Positions 12,101-51,074 of a stretch of DNA of 64,000 nt are shown piece after piece; position 1 is the stretch's first letter, and each line of letters begins with the position of its first letter. Origin of the DNA: Oculina patagonica (lineage: Eukaryota). The notes beneath the pieces were generated by a model. That model did not search any database. It worked only from the letters and a program-made list of their open reading frames with translations, and was not told where the DNA came from. The DNA is taken from NCBI RefSeq assembly GCF_052425735.1, contig NC_135771.1:21142001-21206000 (forward strand), written 5' to 3'. A program made the position numbers and the translations under genes.

Positions 12101-15100
12101 AGGACTAAAAATATTAGCATTCTGTCAGGTTTTGACAATAGTTGACAGATACCCATTGATGGTCCTGGAAGAAGCACTGAGGGTTTCAACTGTTTTGTCC
12201 GAGAAAACAACACAATGAACCCAGCCAGGGTCACTTGTCGGTTCTGGAGCACAACATGCTTACCGTTAGGTCACCACATGCCCCAACCGAGGCTCGTAAT
12301 ACTGACATTGAAACAGTTATAATAGTGAAATAACCAGTGCCACAAAGTTTGCTCATTAAACAGAGGTTCGTTTACAAAGCTGTTAGTTTAGTTTAGTTTA
12401 GATTTATAGTTTAGTTTACTGGTTTAGTTTAGTTTAGTCTAGTCTAGTCTAGTCTAGTCTAGTCTAGTCTAGTTTAGCTGTGTTAGCTTTTAGTCTCTAT
12501 TTTCCTTGTGGGATTGCTTTTCAGTTGTCAATGTACTATAAAGAACTCGAAAGATCTTGGTTTGTTGTGCCCAATCCTTGGTTCTGCAGATCGTTACATG
12601 GTGACAGCGGTGGGATCAAAAGCAATTTAAGCAATCAGGAGAGTGGTAAAGTAGTCTTTGAGCACGGGAATTTTGTCTTGAAGATAATGCTCCTAAGCTC
12701 TGGCCGTACTGACATGCATATGTTAATAGAACTGACAGGTTAATTAGCACTGGTTAGTTGTTTGGGGCCAAAACAGTGACCTTTTTACGAGGAAGCCGCG
12801 TTATCGAGCTAATTCGAAAAAGAATGCCAAAGACAATAGCTGATAATCTGTATATCAGCTGTTTTCATGCTTATAACATTCCCCATGGGAATTCCTGATA
12901 TTATTACGTCACTCAACTTACCAATCTCGGCAAAAGGAACATGGCCGTACAACTCAATGCGCATGCACGGCATGTGTGTCCACTTCGTTGGCCAAATACG
13001 AACATATCTTGCATAAACTCGTTCAGCAAAGATATTCTTTCGTACTGTGTAGCTGTCGAAATTGCCAATTAAATGCTAGAAAATAATACAGAAAATATTG
13101 CAGTAGATTTTCATAAAATTTTAGTAGGTTTAGCGTTACAGTAAAATAGGACGCGTATGGGAAAAAGATTACCCAGCAGACACTGTGGTCTAACGGTTGG
13201 TTTGGGAAAAAGATGCAAAGGAGGATTATTAAAGGTGACTTTTTATTATCGTTTTGTAATGATGTTGGGTGTACAGTTATTGAACATACCTTGCCACCTG
13301 TTATATCGCGATAAAAGTCCCAGTTGGAACCGTCTTTTGAGATTTCCACTTTGTACTCTTCAACAAACGAGCTGGAATTGCTTGAATAACCTTGTGTTGC
13401 TACAGCGCAAACGATGTAAGTTGTGTTCAAGTCAACTTGAAGGTATGAAGGTAAAACCGACTGCGCACACCAGGCTTGTTCATGGTTTAGGCGACCCTTG
13501 TGAGCTTCAAACTTGTAAGCTTCACTTTCAGATGAATTAGATGTGATTTTGCTGTCCACTATGCGCCCTATCTCTATACCAATCGCTTCGTCTTCGCATG
13601 GCAGAGGTTTAAAACCTGAGTTTTGACACAAAAGGAAAGTTTGTATCCACACTGAATATTTAGATGCACAATTTTTTTTAATGGCAAACGCTGCTACGAC
13701 CTACCTCAGTGCAAATACAATCTATATTTTATCTTTTCAATGAAGGAAAAGATCTAGATGGTTTTAAATATTCCTGATGAACACGACATGGGACGGATCT
13801 AGGGGGAGGGTGCAGGGGCTGCGCACCCTCTCTTCCCTGAGATCACCGCGGCTTTCTAATACAACTGGTATTCTGCAAAATTTCAGTTACGCCATTCCTA
13901 AGTGGTGCACCCCCTCCTAAGAAAAATCCTGTATCCGCCCCTCCTGCTGGTGTGAGACTAACTAGCTGTAGGGAACTTACATGTCGACGTCGTGACCCAA
14001 GGAGTTGTTTTCAGGACTACTGAAAACAACTTCAGCTAGTAGTAGGATGGAGAATTTGAGCCTGAAAACTCCGGATACAAGTCAAACGCCCTTAATCAAC
14101 TGGCAACTCTGCCTCCATAATGATATCAACATCTTGATTGCGGCCTTATGCGCCTACTGGCGAGATGAGTCATGATGATTGAAGTAAACAAAACATGATA
14201 GAAAAAGAAAGAGACAGCAACATTGGTATTTTGACCTAGGATTAGGAGTGTTTTGTAACATAGTTTGATAAGACTTTTCTCACCTTTTTTCTTACAGACG
14301 TAAGGTCTCAGTCGAGAACACTTCTTATCTGACCAGTCTCCATCGTTGGACACTACGCAGTTTGAAACATCGCCTTTACTTGTATCTTCTTCCCTAAAAC
14401 TTGAGAAGTTATAAGGTGTTCCATCACTCCACTGAAATACTCCTTCCTGTGCCTTATCGTTCAGTCCTATCCAATGGCCCCCTTCACCAGGGATTAAGGT
14501 TGTGTTTATAAAGTTGTTCTCAGCGCTGCTGGTTATGGACACCAGGTCAGAATGTAAATCAAGGCATTCCTTTCTGGCGTCTTCCCAGCTTGCTTGCCTT
14601 TGAGAAGCTTTATAGCAAAAGCTTTCATATCGAGTCCATTCTGTTGAACACTCTGAAATTGAGCAGGAAAAAACATCAATTGTCAGTACTGGTCCTCTTG
14701 TGTAACAGATGCTATTGTTTTTGGGCAAGAAGTTGGCACATAAAGAAGACTTTATAGGGTCGAAAAGAGGAGGTGCGTGACTGAGTGGCCGGAGTCTTGA
14801 GGCGTTTTGCTTTGAGCCCAGAGTCCCAAAAACTTTGTAAAAAGTCATCTGTCTATTTCTTGGAAACAATAGAGAGGGAAGTATATCCTAAAACATCGTT
14901 TCAAAAAACACTCATGAAACCAACTCCTGACTTTTTTTTTCTGTAAAGCTTCTCAACCATTTATTTATGTCACTGATTGAAAGTTCTTGTCACGAGAAGA
15001 ATAATGCAGAGGCCAACCTTTCGAGGTAATGTATGTAAAAAAAAACTTCGCTTTGGTACTGATTATATAAAAACAAACAATATTATCAATCATTCCACGA

Positions 15101-18100
15101 AATTGAGTCGTACAACGATTTTTAACCAACCGAGGAGGCCCGTAGAGTACAGTTGTTGCTTTCTTCATATCGAACGGCGATGTTGATTAGAGTTATTGTT
15201 TTGCATACAGGCAAACACGTTTTTAATTACCAACAGCAGTATCACCATAAAAAGAAATATTGTCACATGTATTTCGTGCTACTGTTCTACTTAAAGGAAA
15301 TGAGATGATAACTTACAAGTAGCTAACCAATCATAGCGCACGCTTGGTCATTTCTAACGGTCTAACGGTCACGTTTATAATAATATCGAACACGTTATAT
15401 TTTTAACGTTACCTTGACAACCATAAAGTTCTACCCTCATCGATATGTGGTTATACCAAGTCACTGGTACAAAACGAATATAACGAGCCCTGATTGGTGG
15501 GTTCAGCTCATGAGAAACAACAGTGTCGCGGTCTTCGTTTCCAGCAAATTCCTAAAACATTCAGGTGTCGAAATGGTAAGTTAGGGTCAAATTATCAAAC
15601 GTAATATCTTTTCAAAATAAACCTAAGAAACTTTAGATATCATCGAGTGGTACATCAGCATCAGATCATGTGATTTGTTTAAAGTGCCCACTACATGCAA
15701 ATGAAGCAATATTCTCGCTGCAATAAATTTTAAGAAATCAAAAAGGGTAATCAACGCTTCGATGACCTTCGATGGATAAAGTCCAGTTCACCTGACACAG
15801 CGGCCAAGCGAAGAAAGTTTGCGGCTAACTTCCGTTTTCACTGGCATGAATTTTAGTTTATTTATTTCAAGCAAGACTGGAAATAAATGATTTTATGTAG
15901 CTAGCGACTTAATCACCTCCCAATTTCTGGTTTGGGGAAATTCCTACCATCTGGTATGTCACTTCATGAGTTCTTACATGAGGGTGAGGCGAGCCCACAG
16001 TCAATCTTCTTTTATCATATTCTCACATGGCGGACTCGATTTTTTTCCCTCCCTCCACGTCCACGTGACGAAATATTGTTTGACCGACCACGATAACAAT
16101 TATTAAATTCTCATGCTGAAAGTTTACAATACAATACAATACAATAGTCGTTTAATGTGTCATACACTTAGCAATACGGTGTGACATTCAGAAATGTCAC
16201 ACCAGCTAGTTTACAGGTATTCCACCTAAATTAGTTTAAAAAAAATTAGAATGAGTATTTCATAAAAATGAGAAAAACATTTGCATTTTTTGTTTCGCTA
16301 TTTCGCTACACATGTGCCCGCTGAGTAGTTTTACCTTGTCCGTGGTCTGTCCTTGTTCGATGTAGCACCGGAAGGACACTTCATCGTTACTGTACTGCAG
16401 TTTATACCTGGTTACCCACTGACTCCAAACATTTCTTCCTTGCGTTGCTACGCCCATTACTCTAAAGTGCTGACTACCCAGATCAACCTGCAGCCATTGA
16501 TTGACATCATTTGTGCCAGCTACCCAGGCTCCCGCTTTACTTCCTGTTTGTTGAAAGTTTAGTCTGCCCTGCTTGGCGGCATGATTTTCACTCCATTCTG
16601 TAGAGGCAGTAATTTTAGCATCCAATATTGCTCCGCTTTCCATACCGACGGCGTCTTGACATTCTAAAAGCCAGGTTTATGGTACAATGTTAGTAAAACT
16701 TCAGAGCAGTTTTCAATTTAACCAGTGGCAAAAATGAGAGGAGAATTGCTTTGACGAAGTTGCACTGTATGATTAACATCCTGAACAACCCAACCCCTAA
16801 TGCTCAATTATGAGGGGTAGGTTGCAACGATAAACAAATGATTAATTTTAAAAATCTCGTTTCATCGATCCAACCAATCAGATCAAAAGCCAATACCAAT
16901 CGCAAGCCGGTCACTCGTAACTCGCGGCTTCGATTTGCCGCTGGCACGAGTCCCCGAAAAGAGCCTGCTCGCAGGCTAGCCCTTCGCGTCAGACAAGTGT
17001 AGTAGCCTCAAATTCTCATTGATTCATTTTTTTTTTTCATTTGTTGTAACTGGCTATAACGATTGCTTTGGAGTTGGTTTTGCAACATACACTAGAACCT
17101 GCTTCTTATAAATGATTATTTTATGCATTTCCGACAGAGCAGTGCAAAATTGAGCATAATGCTATGGACGTTTTACAACAGACGTAAGCATAGTCCAAAA
17201 TTATCCAAGGAATTTGACAGCCTCCAGAGTAAACCACCTTTAACCAATCAAGCTGGAGTTTAATCTTCGGTATTGATGTTCCCATCAGTAGCTTGCCGTT
17301 TAGAATTATGGTGGATTTTGAGCCATTTGAGCAGTTGTTGCAAAAAGTCCATTACGGCGAGACATTTCTATTTCTTTGTATAAACACGTTGCCGACCGTT
17401 TCAGGTTTGTTGCTAAATGTGTTTCAGCTAAAAACAATACGGTAACTCACGAAATATGCGTCGTTATCTCAACCGTTTAACATATATCACTTTGTGTGTT
17501 AAGTATTCCCTGCTATATGAAAAAACGTTCTACATGTTTGCAAAATAAATTGCAAGAATCTTATCAATCTTTTAACAAATTTCATTTGGTATGGGTTTTA
17601 CCTATATGAAACCTGTTTCTTTATAAAACATCGAAGAAGGGCCAAGCCCGAAACATTTGTTCATTTTAAGTCTTTTATGTCACTTAAAGAGTTTTTTCAA
17701 ATTTTAACAAATGTATACAGAAATAATGCAAAAATAAGCCATGATCTCACGCTTAATTTTGGGACTTGGCTCGATTTCCGCCTTCTCGTGTCCATTTTCA
17801 CGTACAGGGGCTGGAAATCGAGCCTATTGTGCGGTTCATTCTCTGGGTGGCTTCAGTATTATCAGAGGGAAATTGGCGCTTTAGTACGGTAGAAAAGCTA
17901 CTCAGGCTCAAATATAGCGTACAGTCTCCCACGGCATCTTGATATATAAGAGGTTCTGAATTTCCTACCTTTTTTCAACGTTGTGACGTTGACGCATGAG
18001 CTCAAAGCTCCGTCTCCTACGGTGTAGGCCAGCAACTGAACACAGTAGTAAGTATTGTGTACAAGGTTTTTTACTGCCAATGACGTCACGTGGGCATCTA

Positions 18101-21100
18101 CAACTGACATGTGTTTTACGACCTGTTCTGCATTTTTTACGTACACTTTGTATTTCTGGACTATCCCGTTTCTTTCCTGCTCTGGAACCTCTCCCCATGT
18201 GATAAATATCGTATCGACTGCTGTTGCAGTGACTGAAATGTTAGCTGGTGGTGCAGAAGGAGCTAAAGGAGAAATGCATTATTAAAGATATGTTATAACA
18301 TTGACATTTTTTTGAAAAAGATAGACAATCAATCTGTCAATCAATAAATCAATCACATTCTCAAAAAACTTACTCCACTCACTCACTCACCCACTCAATC
18401 AATTAAATAATCAATCAAACAATCAAACAATCGATCAGTCAATCAACCAGCCAATCGATAAATCAATCAATTAACAAATATTCAGTCAATCAACAAAAAA
18501 TCAAACCAGACGTCAATCCATTTTTTACAAAAGTCATATTGACAATGGCGTCATGACAACACCGAAACGTTAAATTTTATCGTTAGTTTTTGCTTGTCTG
18601 TGTCAATCAATACTAGGGGTCATACTAGTTCACTATTTTGGATCGATTTTAAAATGATGCTAGCCCCAGATGAATGGGATGCTTGTCCATCGCAAATTAC
18701 TTCTCGGCTTTCCGTCAGGTTGCCTCAGCAATTCGCCAGTACTCGTTTAAACTTCTGGGTGGAGAGAGGCACTGTGAGTAAAGTGTCTTGCGCAAGACCC
18801 AACAAGCGTAGGGAGTCATTCTAGTAAGACCATGCAAGAGCTGCTACCCGACCCGAAGAAGTGAGCAGACAAAGAGTACTTTTACAGGGTCAAGTGGAGG
18901 AGGAATGTGACTGAGTGACTCGAGACTTGCTTTTTGTACACTTGCTCAAAGTCGCTCGTTTTTTGTGTGTCCGGATAGGGTTACGCTTAAAAAAAGTAAT
19001 AAGAAACCGCGCGCTAAAACCCGCGCGGAATCTATTTGTCCGTGCGTGTTGGCACGCGAAGCGCACTTAATCCACAAATAGCTCGCTCGTTAAGCGATTC
19101 GCCGCCATTTTATTTTGCAAGCCGGCGCGCCCCCTTCATTTCTGTATCCGGCGGTCTGCTGGGTAATGAAACGAGCGACTTGGATGAGTGTATATGCTTC
19201 GAACTCTGCTTGTTTCATTGTTTTTAGGTTTGTTGTTACTTATTATGATTGCTTGTGTTTTGGTTTTTGACATAAACTTTTCGACAGAGCAGTGCAGTCC
19301 AAAACCATTACTCCAAAATTCTAGATTTAAATTCAGAACCATGCAAATAGCAATGGATTTTTTGCAACAAATGGTCGCATGGTCCAAAATCTTCATAAGA
19401 ATGCAACATCCTCCAAAGCAAAGCGACTTCAACCAAGCAAGGTTGAGTTTTCTTTGGTATGGATGTCCCAGTCTGAAACTTGCCGTTCAACGTGGCAGAT
19501 TTTGTACCATGTGATCATTTGTTGCAAGAAGCCCATTCGGACATAATCTTCTTATTTCCTTTTCTGAACACATTATAGTGAACTACCAGCCCATGGTTCA
19601 TTTCTAAATGTCTTTCAATTGAAAAAGTACCGAAACGTATGTTATCTCAACTCGTTACATCAAGATTATTTTCTCTTGTTAACATACAGTATATCCTTTG
19701 TGCGTTAAGTCTTTGCTCAAATACGGGTAATAAATTTGCGCTTGCAGGGTCGTTATGTGAAAAAATTTTAGATGCTTGCAAATTGCAAGAATATCTGGTC
19801 GATGTATTAAAACTACGTCGTTTGGTAATAGTTTCAACATGTTGAGAAAACGTTGTTCTTTAAAATGTATACCGAAATATTTCGAAAATGAAAGGGCTCC
19901 TCCTCCGGCATGGGTGGCTTCAGTATTATGAAAGAAATTTTGCGTTTCATAAGTAGAAAAGAAATTGTGGGAGTAATGTTAAGAAATCTGTTGAAAAAAA
20001 TTTTTGCGTTTGAAATAAGTACAAGCATGTATTTTTGGATAAGAAACTAAAAGGACGTTCTACAGTAAGGTAGCTGAAGTATGCAATGTCTCGAATTGGT
20101 TGTTGCTTGGTATTGAATTACCGCGCGCAAGTATACAACCAAATCTCTGACTTCAATTGAGCGGGAAGAATTGAGCGCGCTTAAGTCTCATCCGCCATCT
20201 TCAAATACTGATGTTCTTACCTTTTTTCAACGTTGTGACGTTGACGCATACGCTCAAAGCTCCGTCTGCCACGGTATAGGCCAACAACTGAACACAGTAG
20301 TAAGTATTGTGTACAAGGTTTGGTACTTCCAATGACGTCACGTTGGCATCTACAGTTGACTCGTGTTCAACGACAAGGTCTGCATTTTTTACGTAGACTT
20401 TGTATTCCCGAACTATACCGTTTCTTTCCTGCTCTGGAACCTCTTTCCATGTGATAAATATCGTATTGACTGCTGTAGCACTGACTGATATGTTTGCTGG
20501 TGGTGCAGAAGGCACTTAAAGAAATGAATAATTTAAATGTTATTACACTTGACAATCAATCTGTTTATCAATCATTCAGTTAATCAACCACTATCTCAAA
20601 CACTTACACAGCGCTCACTCACATATTCACTCTCTCACTCAATCAATTAACCAGTCAATCAGTTAGTCAGTCAGTGGGTCAATCAATCTATCAATTAATA
20701 AACAGCCAATCAATCAATCAGTCAATTAATTACCCAATCAAGAATCAATTAATTAAACAACAATCTATCTATCTATCTATCTAGCTATCTATCTATTTAT
20801 CTATTTATCTATTAATCCATCCATCTATCAACAAAATGCAAACAATCAATCGAGACATCAATCCAAACCTCAACTAATTATAGCTCATTCACTATTTTTG
20901 TGGGGGAGAATGAATCGAATTAAAAAAAATGCCAGACCTAGATGGATGGGATGCTAGTCCATCCCAGGTTATACACTAGCATTCTGTCAGGCTGTCCCAA
21001 CACTTTTCCGTACCTATTTATGGGTATTTAGCCATTTATGTGAGACCCTGTGAGAGCTGCCACCCGACGCGAAGAAGTAAGCGTAGGAAGAGGACTTTAT

Positions 21101-24100
21101 AGGGTCAAACGGGAGGAGGGCTGTGTCTGGGTGCCTGGCAACTTGAGGCTTTTTGTTGTGAATCTGGAGCCTAATGGTGGAATTCCACTGACGCGTAAAT
21201 TTTTACGTGCGTGAAAAAAATTAGAGACAATGTATGAGCGGCCTGCGTAAACGTGTACGCAGGCGTTCATACATTGTCTCTAATTTTGTTACGCACGTAA
21301 AAAATTACGCGTCAGTGGAAATCCACCATAAGGCTAACTTAATTTTACATAGTCGCACATGAACTGTTCAATAACTAGGCGCGCAGAGTCGAGTTGTCTA
21401 TATAACGGCGAGTATGAATGTAACAACTGTTCAAATTATATAAGCAACCCCTTACTTACTTACCAACAGAGCTATTGCCATTAAAGAAAAAACATTTTTT
21501 CCACTGATATTTCGCGGGATTCTTCTACTTAAGGACGTTTGGGCGAATATTATATCTAACAGTCCAACGGTCACATTTATAATCTTATAATAATGTTGAA
21601 CACATTAACTTTTAACGTTACCTTGACAACCATAAAGTTCTACCCTCATTGATATGTGGTTTTTCCAATTCACTGGTACAAAACGAATGTAACGTGCCCT
21701 GATTGGTGGGTTCAACTCATGAGAAACAACAGTATCGCTGTCTACATTTCCAGTAAATTCCTAAAACAGTAAGATGGCAAATGTTAGATCAGTATCATAC
21801 TATCAATCTTGATTATCTTTCCAAATAAACTATATATTTAATTGAAAAGAGAATGATGATTCCATTAAATTGTTAAAACTGTTTGCATTTGGCTTCGATA
21901 TTTTTTGAAAGTTTGACATCCGTGCAACTTTACCTTGTCCGTGGTCTGTCCTTGTTCGATGTAAAACTGGAAGGTCGCTTTATCATTACTGTACTGCAGT
22001 TTATACCTGGTGACCCATTGTTGCACGACCGGACTGGTGTGATTTCTTCCTTGTGTTGCTACACGCGTTACTGTAAAGTACTGACTACCTAGATCAACCT
22101 GAAGCCATTGATTGACACTATTATGGCGAGCTGTCCAACTTCCCTGTGTACTTTCCGTTTGTTGAAAGTTCAGTCTGCCCTGCTTGGCGGCATGATTTTC
22201 ACTCCATTCTGAAGAGGCAGTAATCTGAGCGTCCAATATTGCTCCACTTTCCATGCCGAGGGCGTCTTGACATTCTGAAGGTCAGGTTTTTGAAATCAAT
22301 AAAAAACGTTGTAATAGCCTCATAGCAGTTTTTAATTCAGTTTGGAAAGTAATTCGGGATTGCTTTTTACGCTGTATGATAAACGTCCGCTGACCAACCC
22401 AACCATTAGTGCTCAGTTATGAGGGGTAAGTTGCGATGGAAAATAATAATTAATTAATGATTAGTTTTAAAAACTCGCGCCATATACTCAACGAATCAAA
22501 TAAAAGCCAATACCAATCGTTACTTGGTCACCCACGGTTTACCGTTATCGGACCCAGATGAGTGTATTCGAATTGTCTTGTTATAGTTGGCAATTACGGT
22601 TGCTTTAGTTTACGTTTTGGTTTTGGTTGTGCGCGACTTAACTAAAACCAGCCCTAAAGAAATGTTTATGTCATATATAATTCCAGAACCGTCTCTTCAA
22701 AATTCCTCAGTTAGCTTTAGAATTCAACACCATTCACTAGACCGTTTACAGGAAATAGTCTTATGGTACAAAATCTATCATGTTGAATTGCATAAGAATG
22801 TGACAAGCCTCAAAGCAAAGCAGTGACATATGTACATGTTAGCTTGTGGTGTGAAAGGCGATAAAAGAAATGCATTATTAAAAACATGTTATTACATTGT
22901 CAATTTTGTTTAAAAAAGACAATCAATCACTTTCTCAAACACCTACACACCGCTTACTCAATCAATCAATCAATCAATCAATCAATCTATCTATCAATCA
23001 ATCAATCAGTCAGTCAGTCAGTGAATCAATCACTCAGTCATCAATCAATCAATCAATCAATTAATCCAACAATCCCTTAATTAATCAATCAACGAATCAA
23101 TCCATCAATCAAAGAATCAGCATTCAATCAATCAATCAATCAATCAGTCAGTCAGTCAGTGAATCAATCACTCAGTCATCAATCAATCAATCAATCAATT
23201 AATCCAACAATCCCTTAATTAATCAATCAACGAATCAATCCATCAATCAAAGAATCAGCATTCAATCAATCAATCAATTAACCAATCAACAAATCAATTA
23301 ATTAACCAATCAACAAATCAATCAATCAATGAACCAAAAATCAATCAATCCAAACATCAATCCAATCTCGATCAATAACAGTTTACTTAGATCAGGATGC
23401 TAGCCCTAGGTGGATGGGATGCTAGTCCATCGCAAGTTGCGCCCCAGTATTCTGTCAGGTTACCCGAACAATTCACTGGTACAAATTTACAAAACTGGGT
23501 AAAGAGAGGCACCGTCAGAGTAAAGTACCTTGTGTATGAACACAACAAGAGTAGCGAGCCGTTTATGTGAGACCTTGCGAGGGCTACTTCCCGACGCGAA
23601 GAAGTAAGCATAGGAAAAGGACGGACCAATTTAGGTTTTTGGGAAACTGCTCACCTACCCCTCCCCAAACCTAACATTTTGCCCAAGGCGATAAGTAAGG
23701 GTTAATGTTAGGTTTGGGGAGGGGTAGGTGAGCAGTTTCCCAGAAACCTAAATTGATCCAAAAGGACTTTATAGGATCAAATGGAGGAGGGGTGTGACTG
23801 GGTGGCTGCAGACTCGAGACTTTTTGCTGTGAATCCGGAGACTAAGGCTTTGTAAAAATCATCTTTGAATGAAAAGGAAGTAATAGAGTTGAAAGAATAT
23901 CCTAAAGTATCTTTTTCTAAAAATACTTCAAAAAACCAACTCCTGACATTTACAATTTTCTAAAAAGCCAGTCAAGTGGCGCACACATGGTCATATTCAA
24001 CGGTCTATTGGAAAGCGTTATTTAATAATATTTTATCGAACACGTTTATTTTCCAACAGTACCTTGACAACCATATAGTTCCACCCTCATTGATATGTGG

Positions 24101-27100: not shown

Positions 27101-30100
27101 AACAGGGTAGGACATATGTAACCTCATACGATTAGCTGCGACAAACGTTCCATCTGCTCAACCTAAACACTGATTTTTTTGTATCACAGTATTACGTATA
27201 CATCACTTGCATTAAACTCTTTTCTTGTAGTTTAATTTGATAGTGTCTTTCTGGTGTTGGTAGTTTAAGTGCTTATTCTTCATCATCATCATCATTTATT
27301 TGCCACTCCATTCTTCTCGAGCTCTTCGCTAGATTTAAGGTTAGAGATGTTCCTTTTTAACAATAAATAATCCAGAGTCTACTAGTACAAACTATCAAAA
27401 CCAACCGGAGTTGATTAACATCAATCGCTGCTATTAATATTTCCACACACTTTTCCAAATTTATATTTTAGTTACCTGGCGGTGGTGGTAGGGTGGGCAG
27501 GGTGGTAGCTGCTGAAAATGATCATAAAGTTTGAATTAATACAAGATTAATATACCAAACAATGTCTTCCTACAGTTTCTCGTATAAATAAACCTTGTCA
27601 CAAGAATAGTTGACATTCGCCAACACCAACAAACTTTTCCAAACATTTTTCAGTTACCTGGCGGTGGTGTGCTGGTTGATCGCAGGATGGGTGGGGTGGT
27701 AGGTACTGAAAATGATCATAAAGTTTGAATTAAAACAAGATTATTATCCCAAACAATATCTTCCCATTATTTTCTTGCCTTAAAGTACAAATAAACCCTA
27801 TCATAGAATAATTGTCATTATTAAAAACTAGCAATGGTATATTGCAATTCCTGAGTTTTGATTGGTTAACAGGCAATGGTATATGAGCTCATATACCATT
27901 GAGAACAAATATTGTAGGTACACATGTCAACGAAAACAGCCGAGGAGCTTAAATATTGCAATTGTTTGGGTGTTTTTAATAAAACAATTATTCCACTAGT
28001 ACTCGCGCTTGTTGGATATGAGATAGTTATAGCCAACTCGGCGCTACTCGCCTCGTTGGCTATCTACCATCTCATATCCAACGTGCGCTCGTGTGCTCGT
28101 GCAATAATTGTTAATTAGCCATCTAGCTCTTGTGTTAAGTCTGAGGCAGCGATTATATGGCGAATTTGGACCCAGGCTGAAATTTAAACCCCGTAAGCTC
28201 CTGAGCTCTTCGTGGTTAAATAAACTATGTCTATGTCTATGTCTCTAAGATGCTAGCGGGTGACATTTCGCCACTTGACAAGTTTTTCCCTTTAAAATTC
28301 CTTGTTGTCCGTCCCTGTTGAACAGTAACCGGGTGGCGTCATCATCATCTGTTTCCATAATTCTCCTCTGGGAGAATAGGGCCTTAACCGGGAGACGTAC
28401 CAAGGAAAAACGCGCCACCTGGAACCCCGGGGGGGGGGGAACTCAAAAATGTTTTATACGGGGAGGCTCCGCCCCAAGCTCTTACCCCTTACCCTTTTAT
28501 ATACCACTTTCACAGAAATTGTACCCCTTTCGTATACCTTTTACTGAAAAAAGGTACCCCTTTCATATACCTAAAAGACTTGGCATAGACTTAGAACAGG
28601 ACGTTTTCTTGTCATTTTCATGTTGCGCCTTATAAATTAAAATAATACAGCCATAAAGTGCGTCTGTTCGAAATATTTTAATTCAAGGCCCTTAAAAAAA
28701 CCTAAATGAAGGATTTACATACCCTTTCATATACCTAAACTTGTGAAATCCCAACCCTTTTATATACCTGAAGCCTTAAAAAAGTACCCCTTTCGGGCGG
28801 AGCCTCCCCGTATAGGCCACTATATGGAGTACCCCCCCCCCCCCCCGGGCCTGGAACAGGCCATTACGAGTTGGTTTTTTCTTATTTAATGGGAGCTTCG
28901 TAATTTCACCATACTGGAAGAAATTATTATAGAAAGGTGGTTCTTCAAGTAATTTAAAGGGGTCCAGTACTAAGGTAGTTGTACAGTTTACCATATGTTG
29001 TGTCTTATCGCCTGTAAGTACATATAACAGAAAATCAGCGACAAAGAAAGGGAACTCAGACGTCTCTCGAGTGGGAAAAGAATTGAGTACGAGAGAAATG
29101 ACGTCTGTTTATTCAAGCTACTCGCTTACAATTATAGCAACTGCATGCAGTCTAATCCGCCATCTTTAGTTTAGAGACTGCTAAAGTTTTTACCTTTCAG
29201 AGTTGTGACGTTGACACATGCGCTCAAAGCTCCGTCTGCTACAGTGAAGGCCAGCAACTGAACACAGTAGTAAGTATCGTGTACAAGGTTTGATACTTCC
29301 AATGTCATCACGCTGGCATTAACAACTGACTCATGCTCTACGACCTGTTCTGCATTTTTCACGTAGACTTTGTATCCCCGGATTATACCGTTTCGTTCCT
29401 GCTCTGGAACCTCTTCCCATGTGATAAATAACGTATCGACTGCTGTTGCAGTGACTGATATGTTAGCTGGTGGTGCTGAAGACACTAAACGAAATGTTAA
29501 AATAACTTAAAGAAACTCGAATAAATACTAAGTCAGCTTTTATTTGGTCAATTTGGACGCTTAACGTCTCTTTGGAAAGGCCTTAAGATGTAGAAGGTGT
29601 ACAGATAATTTACTTCTATTTTTTTAAACACGAAATTAAAAATAATGTTCTTTGACTCCTGAAGTTCCGTCACATCTGTTTTCAATCGCGTGTAACACTT
29701 TAAATAACGGTTGAATAATAAATATCAAGAAAATTAGAAAATCGGGCAGCCCAGGAAAAAAAGAATTTGAACTTGCTTCGTACTTTTAGCAAACTGTGCT
29801 ACAGGCGACTAATTCTTTGTTCACCTTCGAGTGTTTCAAAAACTCGATCCCCAAATAGACTTTTTTGAGCCTTTTTTCTCTTATTTTTTAAAATTTAAAA
29901 TCAAAGTAGTATTGCAGTGATTCATTCCTAACCGATATCTACATGTTCACGACACCAATGTGTGGTTACAAGTCAGGATTTGAATAAAGATTTATTTATT
30001 TATTTATTTATTTAGTACATATGTTTGTCTCTCGCCACAAACAGGAAAAAATAAAATTCGTTCTTAACCAAATTTTAGCCTTGGGCACGTTCTTAGGATG

Positions 30101-33100
30101 TTCTTAAATTTTGGCCTTTTTTCAGCCTCGACGTTCTTATAAAAAAGGGTGTAAATAATGGTCTCTGCATGCAAGATATTTTTAGACCAGAAGTCGCACT
30201 CAAACTCAACCGATCAGGATATAGTTTAGTGTTGCCCTTTGTTTCTGACCAATTAGAAAAAAGTCCAGATTCTGGACTTTTTACAGACGACTCGACAAGT
30301 AATTGTATCAGGCGTTCTTTCTCCTCCCGCTGCGAAAAAAAGAACGCCTGATCTCAGGTTAGACTGTATGATTAACGTCCGCAGAAGAATTTGCAAACCT
30401 GGCTAGACGTTTTGCGCTCTCTTTTGCGATTCGCGCTCTGTCAGCTCGACTTAGAAAGTTGCGAATAGCACAACGAGGGTAAGGAGCCATTCAAATGAAA
30501 CTTGCGAGAGCTGCTTTAAATTGACCCGAAGAAGTGAGCATAGGAAGAGGACTGGATAGAGTCAAATGAAGGAGGGGTCGGGTGTTACTGGGTGGCTGGA
30601 GACTTGAGACTTTTTGCTGTGAATCTGGAGCCTAAGTCTTTTTGCAAGCCATTTGTAGATGAATTACAAGTAACAGAGTAGGAAGACTTGGCGCAAACTT
30701 AGTCAAGTTTAAAAATTAATCATTATCATTATTATTAATAAATTAAATCTAACGGTTATAATTATGTACTACACATAAAGGTTTCAGCAGTACCTTGACA
30801 ACCATAAAGTTCCACTCTCAATGATATCCAGCCATCCCAAGCCACTGGTACAAAACGAATATAACGTGCCGTGATTGGTGGGTTCAGCTCATGTGAAACA
30901 ACAGTGTCGCGGTCTTCGTTTCCAGCAAATTCCTAAAACAGTAAGATGCAAAATGACAAGTTAGGGTCTTACTATCAATCGTAATCTTTTCAAGCTAAAC
31001 CCAAGAGGCTTCATTTGAAGAAACAAGGAGCGCTTTTCATTTGTCAGAACTTGCCAGTCAGACCGGTAAATTCGAGAGAAGAATTCCGCTGCTAGTCACT
31101 TCTGTCCTGTCAAATCAGTCGGATGATGGGAAAATCTCGTGGAAAAGGGGCCATTTTATATTTAAAACCACTGGACCGGCCGACCGGTTCTGACTAATGA
31201 AAAGCGCCCTAGCTGACCATATTGCGTCACGTGAAAACCGACCAGCAAATGAAGTATTAGTAATATTGTTGCTGTAACATTACTAAATTTTAAGAAATGA
31301 AAAGAAAAGTTTAATCAACGTTTTGTTGGATTAAGTGCATTTGACATCACACGGTGGTCAACCAAAGAAAGTAAGCGACTTATTTCCGGTTTTCTCCACC
31401 TTGATTTTTATATGTGCAACAACTTTGCAAGAGATACAGGGAAAATAAAATACATGGCAAAAAATGATAAAAATTAACAGCCATTAAATTATAACGTACA
31501 AGTTTCCGTAAATGCTTTAAAATTGGGTTGAAAGTAAATGAGGATTCAATAAAATTGTTAAAAATATTTGCATTTGGCTTCGGTATTATTTTTGGCAGGA
31601 AACTGACCTAAACTGAACCACGCGTGCGCATGCTACACATCATCATCATCATCATCATTATAACCTTTATTTACACACGATAGGGGTTTAAAGCACAATG
31701 CTTGTAAGGTCGTGTATTATACTAAATATTACTAAATACTAATAAACTATATATATTTCTAAATTACTACTAAATACTTATATACTAAATTGGATCGTAA
31801 CTACTATATAAATAATTAATTACGTAATTAATTGTTAATTACATAATTAACATGTGACCGCTGTGCAGTTTTACCTTGTCCGTGGTCTGTCCTTGTTCGA
31901 TGTAATACTGGAAGTTCACCTCATCGTTACTGTACTGCAGTTTGTACTTGGTTACCCACTGGGGGTCGTCTTCATTCCTTCCTTGCGTTGCTACGCCAGT
32001 TACTCTAAAGTACTGACCACCCAGATCAATCTGAAGCCATGGATTAGCATCATGTGTGGCAGCTGACCAAGCTCCTGCTGTACTATCTGTTTTTTTTAAG
32101 TGAAGTCTGCCATTCTTGGCGGCAGAAATGTCAGCCCATTGTGAAGAGGCAGTTATCTGAGCGTCCAGTATTGATCCGCTTTCCATTCCAAGAGCATCGT
32201 AACATTCTGAAGGCAAGGTCAATACAAAAACAACTTTAACATACTTTCAGAGTGCACCATGCAAGTATTTGTTGCAAAAACCCATTCAGGCAAGACCTTC
32301 TTATTTGATTGTCTGAATACGTTGATTATAGTGTACGAATAGCCTACCGTCAATTGCTAATTTTACATTAACTGAGCGAATTCTCGCGCTGTTATTGTAA
32401 AAAACAAATTGACATCAGTTTTTTATGCGTCTGTCCTGATATTGATGATAAATTTCGTCATAACATTATCAAAGTTTGTTATGACGCAATTTAACATTAA
32501 TAACAGGACAGACGCATAATTATATAAAAAACTGATGAAAATTTGTTAAATCTGTTTCAGTTAAGAAGTTACTGAAAGGTACAATGTTTGGAAATGTTCG
32601 GGAAATGTTCAAAAACATTCGTGCGGCCTTCGGACAATATTTTGAAAATCTTCAGAAATCTTTGGAAAATCGTCAAAAATATCGTAATTAGTAGGTTTTT
32701 ATAATAAACAGCATAATACATGGTTGCTTAGAGATATGAAATTCATCTTCTCGTGTTCAAATCGATATCAATTTAAACACTCGAAGATATATTTCATATC
32801 TCCGCGCAACCATGTGTTATCCACTTCTTATTAAACTGACGCTATCTCGACCGGTTAACATACATTAGAGACCTTTAGCATCAGGTTGTTTCTGGCAAAC
32901 TGCAAATCACAAACAAGCTCATAAGAAATAGGTTTCATACCCGCCTGCCATGTGCTAGTGTGTTAGATGGCTTTTCATTAGTCAGGGGTTTAATTAAGGG
33001 CCAGCCAGTACTGGGCAAATTGACCGGCTGTGAACACAACTTTGCCCGGCTCTTTTCAAGAACTGAACCGACTCCATTTTACCAAAAGAGGGTAGGGCCT

Positions 33101-36100
33101 TGCTAATAGTTTGCCCGTGTGCAAAACCGTGATGCCACCTGCTCCAACCCTTAATGAATCCCCTAATTAGTAGATAGAAATTGTGGAGGAGAGTTTAAGA
33201 AATATGTGGAAAATTAAGTTTTGAGTTTCAAATATGGGTAAGCATGCATTTGTTAGAAACTAAAACTAAAAGAACGTTCTTCAGCAAGAAATAACAGGAG
33301 GTACTGGGGCAGTAGTAGCATGCAGCATCTTAACTTAAGATTGGTTGTTTGGTTATGAATTGTTGCGCGCAAATTACAACAAAAGAAATAATCTCTTATG
33401 TCTTTTGGGCGGTAAATACCGGTAGATTTAACTAAAGCTACTGACATACAAATATAACGTGCATTCCTCGTCCGCCATATTGAGATATACTATTGAAGTT
33501 CTTGCCTTTTTTCAACGTTGTGACGTTGACACATGCGCTCAAAGCTCCGTCTGCTACAGTGTAGGCCAGCAACTGAACACAGTAGTAAGTATTGTGTACA
33601 AGGTTTGATACTTCCAATGTCGTCACGTGGGCATCTACAACTGACTCGTGCTCTATGATCTGGTCTGCATTTTTTACGTACACTTTGTATCCCCGGACTA
33701 TACCGTTCCTTTCCTGCTCTGGAACCTCTTCCCATGTGATAAATATCGTATCGACTGCTGTTGCCGTGACTGATATGTTAGCTGGTGGTGCAGAAGGCGC
33801 TAAAAGAAATAGTGTTATAAAAAATGTTACTGTAGCGACAATTTTTTTTTAAAAAAAAAAGACAATCTGTCAGTCAATCAATCAATCAATTAATTAGGCA
33901 GTCAGTCTGCCAAGGCAATCAAACGATCCATCGAGCACTCAAGCAATCATTAATCCTGAAACATCCACCCAATTTTTAATTGATAATAGTTCACTCTAAT
34001 ATTAATAATGGTAATAGGACTGAGTGGAGTCCAATTCGGTCTGTAATCATACGAGTGATTAACAAAATCGGACGACCGCGAAGCGGGAGTCCGATTTGTT
34101 TAATCACGAGTATGATTACAGACAGAATTGGATGACACGAAGTCCAGTTACCAATTAATCAAAACTATGACAAAATTTGAGAAACAAATTAAACTAATCT
34201 TCGGTTAAATGGTTAAACGGTTTTATAAAAACTGAAAAACATAACAGTTTACTCAACAAAATGCACAACAACAGCGCGCGCAAAATGACGCGTACTGTCC
34301 AATTACACAGGCATGACGCGTACACTTTCCTATTACACTGTCCAATTACAAGCATGACGCGTACACTGTCCTATTAGTGATCAAATCGGGCTGCTGATAA
34401 CCAATCACGTTCGAGAATTTTGTTAAAGTTTTGATTAATGGGGAAAGCACAAACAATATTTCCACAGTCCACCAACTTCATTTGATAAATACAGAATGTA
34501 TTAATATTACGATAGTTGTAAGCTGCACCCATACACTAATCGAAAGTACTTATATCAGACCTTCTAAAGTACTTATCAAAAGGTCAGTTTGACTCAGGTT
34601 GGGAGCACCCGGAATTTCTTTTTTTTCGAGTAAGCTTCTGAAAAACATCATCCTCCACTTTAAAGGGACCGTGTCACGGATTTTAGCCAAACTTAGGCGT
34701 AGGAAATAACCATCAAATTCGCTTAAATATATAAAATAAGCTTTTAAATCAGTGAAGGATTATTAAAATGACACACCAAATGCAAAAGAAGGTACGGATG
34801 GCCAAAATTGTCGAAGATTGAAACGGATTGCGATATGGGTTTTTGAAATATGGTCCGGCGGATCAGTTTTCAAAGTTAATCTTGTCTTCTTGTAACTTTA
34901 AATTATAACGCCCAGGAGACACATTTGGCTGCAATGAAGCTATGGCTTTGTCAATTGGACTCGTAGAATTAATTTCGTTGCAAACATTTAGTATCATAGC
35001 GAATATTTGACAACATTTATTAACATAAAATTAACTTAGCCGTAACACAGTCCCTTTAAGGTCATTGCCCTTCGCCTACTGGTTTATTACTTTAAGGGAA
35101 CTTATATTTTGAAATAAAAAAGGGGGGGCACCAGATTCGTTTAGGAGCAGGAAGACTTTGTATATTCCATATAATTCCTTTAAAATTCCTCTGCGAGTAC
35201 TAGCAAAGTACACGTTTTTAGCGATAATTTATTTTTCAAACACAATACTTGATCTGTTTTCATTTTACAGAAAGAATTTGATCGCTACACCCAAAATATG
35301 AGAAAAAATTGATAGGTCACCAGACTCGTTTACGAGAAAGCGACAATTTACTTACAAACCACATAGAAAAAAGCCGCCATTTTGTTTATGTGCGCTTATT
35401 GCGCGTAAAATTCTGCGCAGTAAGGATGCGCATTGCAATACAGGGCAATGACCTTAATCACCAGGCTCAAAATGTACCATTTTTATTTCCATTATTTCCC
35501 GCATTTTTTACCTACCTAAAAAATTGTGCATATAATCATTCTATTAACATTGTTATCCGAGCTGTGAGCGATTTTTAAGTACACCATTCTTACCATCTTC
35601 GGCTGTAAATGCGCAGACTTCATCACTTTCGTCTCCATACCCTTCTACAGGTCCTATCCTTGTTATCGCTGTTACGGTCACACAGTACTCCTTGTATTTG
35701 TTCAATCTAGTTAGTGTTTTTTCCTGTGCCAAATCTTTGAGAATTATCTCCTCTGTTACATTGTTGTGGTCTGTTCTTTTGATCAGGTATCCTACTGTTA
35801 CATCAGGATTAAAATACGCTCTCCAGTGATCCCAGCGTATCAGTAGTGAAGTTGAACTGGTATTGAACACCTCGATGATCTTCGGTGCATCAGTTGGAAC
35901 TATAAATAAATAACAAACGGTTAGGTAGCTCCTAATGTCAGAGTTCAAAGGGGAGACGTTGTGAGGGTAGAAACTCAACTTTGATGTAGCAAGGGATAAG
36001 GAAAGACTAACGGTACTAATAACGCGTCTTTTCGGGCGTATTTATTTGCAACGAACGCGTATAGCTGTCGCATTTGCTCTTTTTATTGTTTTCAAGCTAA

Positions 36101-50180: not shown

Positions 50181-50296
50181 ACCCTGCCAGTAGGGCCTCT
50201 TTTATTAAACTTCCCTGTGTCTGAAATTTGGGAAGTATATAAGTGGAAAAGACAGGGCTCTGCTTGCAGGGAGAAATTAAAACATGAGAGAATTAA

Positions 50297-51074
50297 GGAC
50301 GGTGCCTACTAATAACAAAGTATTTTTTCCCGGCCGAAGACTATGCAAGAAATGTAGATGTTACCAAGGGCTACTGAAATTTAAAAAGAAAATTGGGGGT
50401 AGCCACGCAAATTTTCGAGATAATTAGGTTTGAAATCTGGAAAAAAGTGCTGACGTGGCATTTTAAAATAAAGTTGAACTAAATACAATTTCCTTGCAAA
50501 TTCCATTTGAAATTGGTTTTTCATGAACGAAATCAACATTAAATATAACAATCTTTACAATAACTAACAAATAACATGTGCTCTATAGACTTACCACTTA
50601 CATTTTATAAAATAAAAAGTAGGGGTCACCACGCGTTTTTAAAAGTTATACCAGTTGTTTTCAGGTTCTATGAAATCGCTTTTGGGGTCTGTTACATTTT
50701 TCCTATCCCCTCCCTAGCGAGTTGAAGATTTGCATCTCGCGCGTGCACTACGCCATTTGTCACGGTTAGCAGTTTGCGGGTAACGTTTTAGCGCTTAGCG
50801 ATTTATTTTTTACTGTTAATGTGAGCCATTTTCAGTGGTAAGCGGTCAATGGTTACTGATATGTTGATTTTCCGCTGTTCCTGGCTTAGGATATGTCCAT
50901 AAACTGGATTTCGTCGCAGAGAAAACTTTCTTGATTTTTAGTCGCGCGCTTGTTCGCGTAGTTGAATTCGTCATTTTGAGCGAGCAAATTAATTAAAAGC
51001 GCGCGCGCCCAGTGTGATCGATGCATTGCGTGATGCGCAGAACAAGCGCGCAGTAGCAATAGGAGGCACCGTCC
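50297..51074. mobile_element. Non-autonomous DNA transposon with TTAA TSD (Kolobok-like), inserted in the satellite tail
   Basis: TTAA|GGACGGTGCCT...AGGCACCGTCC|TTAA. Confidence 0.88.

What the first reader, a model, noticed from the sequence alone, without database searches (positions are those of the whole stretch)
14740..33960. Recent intragenic tandem array of five FN3+discoidin units
Seen: near-identical 291-294-nt FN3 exons, 323-341-nt plus 139-nt discoidin exon pairs, and shared intron landmarks (AATC tracts, a decayed SINE, a GAAGAAGT.AGCA...GGAGGAGG block) recur every 3-6 kb. Units: A (33506/31875/30794), B (29194/25819/24063), C (dead FN3/21934/21622), D (20221/none), E (17969/16335/15413). 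Inference: accordion-like expansion by unequal crossing-over, so ectodomain length may vary among individuals or species.
Basis: seen in the sequence. Interest (0 to 1): 0.7.

Follow-up and report, generated by a model that had tools for sequence, protein, structure and literature searches.

The report
Old FN3-discoidin repeat array in coral receptor
A giant coral cell-surface gene carries a real run of five repeated "FN3 plus discoidin" modules made by copying a three-exon block, but the copies are old and shared with sister genes and related corals, so this is ordinary domain-repeat evolution and not a recent, still-moving expansion.

Summary
- Four FN3 exons of 291-294 nt.
- Four discoidin exon pairs of 323-341 nt plus 139 nt.
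- A 37-nt stub of a fifth FN3 exon.
- Unit D, which has no discoidin.

All splice sites are usable and all modules are phase 1-1, so the frame stays open. Introns are homologous position by position, including in single-copy stretches.

"Near-identical" and "recent" do not hold. Units differ by 8-20 % in nucleotides (dS 0.11-0.39). Three sister loci on the same scaffold carry the same unit types at 95-98 % identity (dS 0.03-0.09), and trees group units by type, not by gene. The array therefore predates the gene duplications. Contigs from two other coral species and one other coral assembly fit the same decayed structure.

Unit content does differ among the sister genes. Those differences arose by independent deletions with out-of-register or microhomology ends, not by in-register unequal crossing-over. 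One sister gene shows a clear gene-conversion tract between units.

A more distant coral has the flanking domains but no array, so the expansion is lineage-specific. Variation among individuals was not testable. This is an ordinary kind of event, well documented here. The scan had not noted it on other DNA.

The parts
36205..36498 (-).
   Evidence: 66-73 % aa identity to A/B/D/E, dS 0.39-0.53. Phase 1-1, AG/GT. Pairs with P2_U at 100 % support.
35594..35899 (-). Unrelated FN3 exon between U and A (context, phase 1-1)
   Evidence: Pfam fn3. Acceptor and donor found in phase 1.
33506..33799 (-). FN3_A exon, 294 nt, phase 1-1, with a GC donor
31875..32206 (-). Discoidin exon 1 of unit A (332 nt, phase 1-0)
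   Evidence: Pfam F5_F8_type_C, 5.6e-18. Boundaries.
30794..30932 (-). Discoidin exon 2 of unit A (139 nt, phase 0-1)
29194..29484 (-). FN3_B exon, 291 nt
   Evidence: Pairs with P2_2 at 99 % support.
25819..26141 (-). Discoidin exon 1 of unit B (323 nt)
   Evidence: The whole B discoidin (both exons, 459 nt) is 98 % nt identical to P1_1.
24063..24201 (-). Discoidin exon 2 of unit B
22820..22857 (-). Stub of the FN3 exon of unit C: first ~37 nt only, acceptor AG->AT, 4-nt insertion
   Evidence: Local alignment to FN3 A/B/D/E. The same region is collinear in P2 at 95 %. It is also covered by a contig of another species (record 6) and by L014.
21934..22274 (-). Discoidin exon 1 of unit C (341 nt)
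   Evidence: Pairs with P2_3 at 100 % support. An X19 contig piece ends exactly at 22274.
21622..21760 (-). Discoidin exon 2 of unit C, separated from exon 1 by an intron of only 173 nt
   Evidence: An X19 contig piece ends at 21622.
20221..20514 (-). FN3_D exon, 294 nt; this unit has lost its discoidin
   Evidence: Pairs with P1_2 at 99 % support. An X19 contig covers 20293-20514 with 0 mismatches and ends at the exon border.
19183..19184 (-). Junction of the deletion that removed the discoidin exons of unit D
   Evidence: P1 carries 3.3 kb here (P1 8321-11626) holding a DS1 and a DS2 exon. The junction has 1-3 nt of microhomology.
17969..18262 (-). FN3_E exon, 294 nt
   Evidence: Groups with P1_3 and P2_4 at 100 % support.
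16335..16663 (-). Discoidin exon 1 of unit E (329 nt)
15413..15551 (-). Discoidin exon 2 of unit E
14284..14652 (-). C-type lectin exon that follows the array (phase 1-1)
   Evidence: Pfam Lectin_C, 5.6e-22. Splice sites.
23760..23968 (-). Single-copy intron 'block' after discoidin exon 2. Homologous copies lie at 30545-30686, 21022-21174, 18800-18936 and 14727-14949.
   Evidence: Read depth is near single-copy. The only other genome matches are in P1 and P2.
22958..23367 (-). (TCAA)n tract upstream of the FN3 position. Others lie at 20635-20781 and 18395-18504.
23396..23622 (-). Old interspersed repeat plus unique flank. Copies lie at 18656-18867 and 20929-21095.
   Evidence: No tRNA-like part.

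Best explanation
The stretch is the middle of the ectodomain-coding part of one very large minus-strand coral gene. Its domains run TSP1, discoidin, FN3, C-type lectin, and end in a glutamate-receptor-fold channel.

Origin of the array (inferred from the steps below). An ancestral three-exon module was copied in tandem until the gene held at least five FN3+discoidin units (A to E). The module was one FN3 exon plus two discoidin exons, with its introns. An older solitary FN3 (U) lies upstream. Every module starts and ends in intron phase 1, so any number of units, or a unit missing one domain, still reads in frame.

Order of events (shown).
1. The units diverged to 8-20 % under purifying selection.
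2. The FN3 exon of unit C was cut down to a stub.
3. The whole gene region was copied into sister loci on the same scaffold.
4. Each sister copy then lost different domains through separate deletions. This gene lost the discoidin of unit D. P2 lost all of unit D. P1 lost the discoidin of unit C.
5. At least one gene-conversion event occurred between units.

Function (inferred). The array forms a rod of FN3 spacers carrying four discoidin binding heads. The sequence differences between those heads cluster in three or four variable segments, so the protein would present several related but non-identical binding sites next to its lectin domains.
For: Exon structure and intron homology.
- Exon coordinates, splice sites and phases. 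Neighbouring exons are also phase 1-1.
- Domain identity.
- Intron homology is position-specific. FN3->DS1 introns match one another, DS1->DS2 introns match one another, and DS2->FN3 introns match one another. This includes stretches at single-copy read depth.
- This FN3 subtype has 14 copies, all at four loci on scaffold C14. The next best FN3 in the genome is 41 % identical.

Relative age.
- Within-gene divergence: dS 0.11-0.31 for FN3 and 0.27-0.39 for discoidin, with dN/dS 0.3-0.7.
- The same unit types between the window and P1 or P2: dS 0.03-0.085.
- The window gene and P2 are collinear at 95-97 % identity, introns and stub included.
- Trees pair W_U+P2_U (100), W_B+P2_2 (99), W_D+P1_2 (99) and W_E+P1_3+P2_4 (100). 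For discoidin: W_A+P2_1 (95) and W_C+P2_3 (100).

Later deletions and conversion.
- Unit maps of the sister loci.
- Deletion junctions.
- Conversion mosaic in P2.

Other corals.
- Another coral assembly (L014) has intron - stub - DS_C - FN3_D - discoidin at 85-95 % identity.
- A distant coral contig (L015) has the flanking domains in order but no FN3+discoidin array.

Transcription and domain integrity.
- A run guessed to be RNA covers only exons plus repeats. Its contig pieces end exactly at exon borders 20514, 21622 and 22274.
- Both discoidin cysteines and the NIS/NVT sequons of FN3 are kept in every copy.
- Variable discoidin columns cluster at alignment columns 21-53 and 75-91.
Against: - No read or contig spans a whole unit, so the long-range assembly of the array rests on the assembly itself.
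- The run used as RNA is only guessed to be RNA, and the exon-exon joints were not among the joints listed. Splicing of stub-skipping (B->C) and of FN3_D->FN3_E is therefore inferred from phases, not seen.
- Gene conversion between units can make dS a poor clock. FN3 dS is lower than the divergence of the flanking introns, so the relative ages carry uncertainty.
- Contigs from other species could belong to orthologues of P1 or P2 instead of the window gene.
- P1 is interrupted by an assembly gap just upstream of its array.
- The binding function of the discoidin heads is inferred from family knowledge only.
Confidence: 0.8

Rival explanations
1. The array is a recent and still active accordion driven by in-register unequal crossing-over between units, so unit number is polymorphic among individuals and differs between close species.
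For: - Sister genes differ in unit content.
- A 150-200 nt conversion tract between units about 14 kb apart in P2 shows that the units do pair and recombine.
- Homologous introns and (TCAA)n tracts offer substrates for mispairing.
Against: - Units are 8-20 % diverged, and roughly two- to ten-fold older by dS than the gene duplicates.
- Unit types are shared across paralogues and with another species' assembly.
- The deletions that can be reconstructed have out-of-register or microhomology ends.
- Contigs of two other species fit the stub and the discoidin-less D junction.
Confidence: 0.12
2. The array is an assembly artefact: haplotypes or paralogous loci stitched in tandem.
For: - Three further loci at 95-98 % identity lie on the same scaffold.
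- P1 has an assembly gap.
- No contig spans a full unit.
Against: - Units within the window differ by 8-20 %, with different intron lengths and different transposon insertions. That is far more than haplotypes differ.
- An independent DNA study gives contigs with 0-6 mismatches over unit-specific intron stretches, including 19340-20242 and 22252-22794.
- Three near-copies cannot be two haplotypes.
- No extra copies lie on unplaced contigs.
Confidence: 0.03
3. The units were assembled independently by exon shuffling: FN3 and discoidin exons were recruited several times from elsewhere in the genome, not copied in tandem.
For: - The genome holds more than a thousand candidate discoidin exons of the same exon structure.
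- All modules are phase 1-1, the class that shuffles easily.
Against: - Introns between and around the exons are homologous in the same order in every unit.
- This FN3 subtype exists only at the four related loci.
- The discoidin copies of this family match one another better (69-90 % aa) than they match discoidin exons at other loci of the genome, which reach at most 69 %.
Confidence: 0.02

Closest known systems
Tandem expansion of multi-domain units inside genes (Bjorklund, Ekman and Elofsson 2006, PMC1553488; for example nebulin super-repeats)
   Same: Several domains are copied at a time in the middle of a repeat region, and the exon structure allows in-frame copying (abstract read). Here the unit is FN3+discoidin in three exons with symmetric phase 1 borders.
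   Different: The unit mixes two unrelated folds, not one domain family. Copies have since lost single domains, leaving an irregular pattern (F-D, F-D, D, F, F-D).
Copy-number-variable exon-pair repeats such as the kringle IV type 2 array of human LPA (from general knowledge, not checked here)
   Same: A domain encoded by a small set of exons is repeated head to tail with introns included, which lengthens a secreted or surface protein.
   Different: Those units are almost identical and their number varies between individuals. Here units are 8-20 % diverged, each has a recognisable type shared with sister genes, and no polymorphism has been shown.
Tandem discoidin (F5/8 type C) pairs of coagulation factors V/VIII, MFGE8/EDIL3 and neuropilin b1-b2 (family knowledge; Pfam PF00754)
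   Same: The domain family is the same, with both conserved cysteines, and domain duplicates sit within one protein.
   Different: In the coral gene each discoidin is separated from the next by an FN3 domain. There are four of them plus three more distant ones, and the protein ends in a channel module.
Coral FN3-tipped glutamate-receptor-fold potassium channel family
   Same: It is the same gene: its 3' end at 1-3.3 kb of the window gives weak Pfam Lig_chan (below the gathering cut-off) and Ion_trans_2 matches.
   Different: Those notes concern the channel. The repeat array in the ectodomain was not described there.

Membership tests
Pfam fn3 (PF00041) | Profile match above the gathering score | tested here: met
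   FN3_A scores 37.9 bits against a cut-off of 25, and FN3_U 26.0 bits. The core Trp and Tyr-x-Cys are kept in all copies.
Pfam F5_F8_type_C (PF00754, discoidin) | Profile match above the gathering score over the whole domain, with the two conserved cysteines | tested here: met
   Exon 1 scores 65.7 bits over profile positions 1-90 and exon 2 scores 35.7 bits over positions 86-127. The N-terminal Cys and the C-terminal Cys (YGCQ) are present in all four copies.
Intragenic tandem duplication of an exon module | Adjacent copies in the same orientation with the same exon order and lengths | tested here: met
Intragenic tandem duplication of an exon module | Introns, not only exons, are homologous and in the same order | tested here: met
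   Position-specific intron matches at 67-86 % identity, including single-copy stretches.
Intragenic tandem duplication of an exon module | Symmetric intron phases, so that copies stay in frame | tested here: met
   FN3 is phase 1-1 and the discoidin pair is 1-0/0-1. The neighbouring exons are 1-1.
Recent, recombination-driven copy-number-variable array | Units nearly identical (a few per cent divergence or less) | tested here: not met
   80-92 % nt identity, dS 0.11-0.39.
Recent, recombination-driven copy-number-variable array | Units of one gene are each other's closest relatives | tested here: not met
   Each unit's nearest relative is the same-type unit in a sister gene.
Recent, recombination-driven copy-number-variable array | Gains or losses have in-register breakpoints in homologous sequence | tested here: not met
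   The window gene's deletion joins an FN3->DS1-type intron to a DS2->FN3-type intron with 1-3 nt of microhomology. P2's deletion leaves two copies of the block.
Recent, recombination-driven copy-number-variable array | Unit number differs among individuals | not testable with these tools
   Only short contigs of public runs were available, and the single read-laying run was used.

The most novel reading that the evidence does not exclude
The four sister loci could form a fast-diversifying receptor set. In this reading, loss of single domains, gene conversion between units and divergence of the discoidin loops produce different ectodomain 'bar codes' on glutamate-receptor-fold potassium channels. 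Unit content would also be polymorphic among colonies. That would make the locus a candidate for recognition of microbes, symbionts or non-self tissue, coupled directly to membrane potential.
Probability: 0.12. Interest if true: 0.65.

Novelty: new member of a known kind. Interest (0 to 1): 0.3.

Why it matters
This is a clean, fully mapped example of how a large mosaic surface protein grows and then erodes. A two-domain, three-exon module was copied in frame. Single domains were later deleted without breaking the reading frame, and sister genes now carry different subsets of the same unit types. That is useful for annotating this gene family correctly, because gene predictors break these loci into fragments: the public protein models found were 100-500 residue pieces. 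It also helps in choosing which discoidin heads to test for ligands. It does not by itself open a new question, because domain-repeat expansion by exon duplication is well known.

Tried and rejected
- Full-length orthologues. An exhaustive profile-free search with the FN3_A exon returned only short fragments at high identity (P0012, P0016, P0026, P0037, P0058, P0062). The long hits were generic FN3 proteins at about 30 % identity. Repeat counts in orthologous proteins could therefore not be read from protein models. I used the encoding contigs instead.
- The search for homologous proteins was not used. Exon-sized queries cannot reach multi-thousand-residue proteins under its length rule, and a spliced protein has no reference.
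- Reads. The listed joints were dominated by repeats. No contig spans a unit.
- SINE identity. ARAGORN found no tRNA-like part. The element is an old dispersed repeat at 72-82 % identity to other copies, so its core cannot tell inheritance from independent insertion. Only its unique flanks can.
- High read depth at the 'landmarks' first suggested they were all transposons. The peaks turned out to be a young palindromic MITE at 23622-23763 that is absent from P1 and P2, plus presumably a second copy at about 21202-21327, where only the depth peak and opposite-strand joints were seen.
- In-register unequal crossing-over as the cause of the differences between sister genes was rejected for the three deletions that could be mapped.
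- Literature searches for coral FN3/discoidin arrays found nothing specific.
- Structure prediction of a discoidin unit was left out, because the domain is split over two exons and has no single reference.
Full report
**What is there**

The window is G000:C14:21142001-21206000. The finding lies in one very large minus-strand gene.

Six-frame reading and Pfam give the following order, from high to low coordinates:
- TSP1
- a distant discoidin
- FN3
- FN3_U
- another FN3
- the array
- C-type lectin, discoidin, C-type lectin, FN3, C-type lectin, discoidin
- three FN3
- a glutamate-receptor-type channel part at 1-3.3 kb (weak Pfam Lig_chan, below its cut-off, and Ion_trans_2 matches; described in note s1-286755).

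**Checking the observation**

Exons and splice sites.
- FN3 exons: 294, 291, 294 and 294 nt. Discoidin first exons: 332, 323, 341 and 329 nt. Discoidin second exons: always 139 nt.
- Every exon has a polypyrimidine-AG acceptor and a GT donor, except FN3_A, whose donor is AAG|GCAAGA.
- Phases are 1-1 (FN3), 1-0 and 0-1 (discoidin pair). The FN3 exon before the array (35594-35899) and the lectin exon after it (14284-14652) are also 1-1.
- The reading frame therefore stays open through A(F,D) - B(F,D) - C(D) - D(F) - E(F,D).

The two decayed units.
- The 'dead FN3' of unit C is the first 37 nt of the exon at 22820-22857. Its acceptor is changed to AT and it has a 4-nt insertion. The rest of the exon and most of the following intron are gone.
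- Unit D has no discoidin remnant.

Intron homology.
- A pairwise comparison of all introns shows homology that is specific for position. FN3->DS1 introns match one another, DS1->DS2 introns match one another, and DS2->FN3 introns match one another, at 67-86 % identity.
- The intron between FN3_D and FN3_E is a fusion of an FN3->DS1-type 5' part and a DS2->FN3-type 3' part.
- The intron between DS2_B and DS1_C is the reverse fusion around the stub.

Are the landmarks just transposons? Some landmark bins have very high read depth, so I checked.
- One peak comes from a young palindromic ~140-nt MITE at 23622-23763, which is absent from the sister loci. A second peak at about 21202-21327, with opposite-strand joints, is presumably another copy.
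- The block and the 5' part of the D-E intron sit at single-copy depth, and the block's only other genome matches are in P1 and P2.
- The 'SINE' core is an old dispersed repeat at 72-82 % identity to other genomic copies, with no tRNA-like part. Its flanks are unique to the family.
- Intron homology is therefore real.

**How similar, how old**

Within the gene.
- FN3 copies A, B, D and E are 87-92 % identical in nucleotides (dS 0.11-0.31).
- Discoidin copies are 80-87 % identical (dS 0.27-0.39).
- dN/dS is 0.3-0.7.
- FN3_U at 36205-36498 is an older member of the same subtype (dS 0.39-0.53).
- 'Near-identical' is an overstatement.

The decisive result came from the rest of the genome.
- This FN3 subtype has 14 copies, all on scaffold C14, in four loci. 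They are the window, P1 (20.56-20.57 Mb), P2 (20.86-20.88 Mb) and P3 (21.59-21.61 Mb, opposite strand). The next best FN3 in the genome is 41 % identical (discoidin).
- I fetched the three loci and mapped their units:
  - P2: U, A, B, C (discoidin only), E.
  - P1: a B-type discoidin, a complete D unit, a complete E unit.
  - P3: F, F+D, F+D.
- Maximum-likelihood trees group units by type across genes:
  - FN3: W_U+P2_U (100), W_B+P2_2 (99), W_D+P1_2 (99), W_E+P1_3+P2_4 (100). W_A's nearest copy is P2_1 at 97 % identity.
  - Discoidin: W_A+P2_1 (95), W_C+P2_3 (100). W_B's nearest copy is P1_1 at 98 % identity.
- Between the window gene and its sisters the same unit types differ by dS 0.03-0.085.
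- The window gene and P2 are collinear at 95-97 % identity through introns and through the stub region.
- The array, including the loss of FN3_C, is therefore older than the gene duplications, by roughly two- to ten-fold in dS.
- Conversion between units can blur this clock. FN3 dS is lower than the divergence of the flanking introns.

**What changed later**

Comparison of the three close loci reconstructs three separate deletions.
- The window gene lost 3.3 kb holding both discoidin exons of unit D. P1 still has them, at P1 9481-9618 and 11025-11351. The junction is at window 19183/19184, with 1-3 nt of microhomology, and it joins two non-homologous intron types.
- P2 lost the whole D unit. 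It keeps downstream intron sequence beyond the window gene's junction and retains two copies of the block. Its deletion is therefore independent and out of register.
- P1 lacks the discoidin of unit C.
- None of these looks like an in-register unequal crossover.

The units do still interact. The E-position discoidin of P2 is a mosaic. Its ends are 96-100 % identical to E-type copies, and its middle 150-200 nt are 96-100 % identical to the A-type copy of the same gene. That is a conversion tract.

P2 also has a TGT->TGA change at the first cysteine codon of its B-type discoidin, so it may be decaying.

**Other corals and reads**

Other coral assemblies.
- A 5.4-kb contig of another coral assembly (L014, GCA_044670265.1) aligns at 85-95 % as intron - stub region - DS_C - FN3_D - discoidin. 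It shares the stub and keeps the discoidin of D.
- A contig from a more distant coral (L015) carries the flanking domains in the same order, but has only solitary FN3 exons and no FN3+discoidin array.
- A third assembly (L010, GCA_029204205.1) shows a U-like FN3, the intervening FN3, an A-like FN3 and one divergent discoidin before an assembly gap.
- The expansion is thus specific to a sub-lineage of corals.

Public runs.
- An independent DNA study (X3) gives contigs with 0-6 mismatches over unit-specific introns.
- A contig of organism B joins the 3' flank of FN3_D to the downstream block with no discoidin between.
- A contig of organism C runs through the stub region.
- A run guessed to be RNA (X19) covers only exons and repeats. 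Its contig pieces end exactly at 20514, 21622 and 22274, and one covers FN3_D with no mismatch.
- Exon-exon joints were not among the rows shown, and no contig spans a unit. Splicing and long-range order therefore remain inferred.

**How it most likely works**

Shown: the structure, its history relative to the sister genes, and purifying selection on all copies.

Inferred: the array encodes an extracellular rod in which FN3 domains space four discoidin heads, next to C-type lectin domains.
- The conserved NIS and NVT sequons in FN3 and the paired cysteines in discoidin fit an extracellular location.
- Half of the discoidin columns are invariant. The variable columns cluster at alignment columns 21-53 and 75-91, in line with the sibling note s1-286933. 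In solved discoidin domains the ligand site is formed by loops at one end of the barrel (family knowledge). I did not map the variable segments onto a structure.

**Comparison and verdict**

This is a new, well-resolved example of a known process: expansion of domain repeats by tandem duplication of several domains at a time in exon-compatible phase (PMC1553488).

It fails three tested features of a young copy-number-variable array:
- units are not near-identical;
- a unit's closest relative is not in its own gene;
- deletion breakpoints are not in register.

The 'recent' label and the expectation of present-day length variation are not supported, though variation among individuals remains untested.

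Noticed in passing
window 33504-33505 (minus strand, donor of FN3_A): The donor is GC (AAG|gcaaga). All 13 other copies of this exon in the four loci, including the 97 % identical P2 copy, have GT. This is a change specific to this gene that may weaken splicing or be tolerated.
   Followed up: partly
L002:6999-7001 (P2 locus, G000:C14:20872999-20873001): The first cysteine codon of the B-type discoidin exon reads TGA, against TGT in the window and in P1. The sister gene P2 may be a pseudogene or may skip this exon.
   Followed up: partly
L001:6835-7164 (P2 locus, E-position discoidin exon 1): The exon is a mosaic. Its ends are E-type and its middle 150-200 nt are 96-100 % identical to the A-type unit about 14 kb upstream in the same gene. 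This is a gene-conversion tract between units.
   Followed up: yes
window 23622-23763 and about 21202-21327: The element at 23622-23763 is a ~140-nt palindromic MITE-like sequence, 97-98 % identical to dozens of copies across the genome and absent from the sister loci, so it is a very young insertion. A read-depth peak with opposite-strand joints at about 21202-21327 looks like a second copy; that one was not searched.
   Followed up: partly
G000:C7:28856173-28891161: More than 30 discoidin first exons with identical scores lie at a period of about 1118 nt. This is a much younger and far larger discoidin tandem array than the one studied here.
   Followed up: no
window 47700-50300 (+ strand): A long tandem repeat with an open frame of KLKHEGTQNETE-like units and a strong AT skew (0.57 in 48001-50000).
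   Followed up: no
window 22958-23367: The (TCAA)n tract upstream of the FN3 stub has grown to 410 nt through a higher-order 138-nt duplication (2.3-2.8 copies at 88-95 %).
   Followed up: no
window 26560-26862 (minus strand, inside the 3-kb FN3_B->DS1_B intron): An open frame that looks to me like the tail of a retrotransposon protein (not tested). Together with nearby AT-rich tandem repeats it may explain why this intron is twice as long as its homologues.
   Followed up: no
window 37227-37268: A (CCT)n run lies inside the open frame of the upstream FN3 exon and reads as a poly-Glu/poly-Gly stretch on the minus strand.
   Followed up: no
window 979-1299 and 2922-3344 (minus strand): The 3' end of the same gene gives weak Pfam Lig_chan (26 bits, below the 30.8-bit cut-off) and Ion_trans_2 (23.5 bits, above cut-off) matches. 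This is the glutamate-receptor-fold channel already noted by the scan.
   Followed up: no
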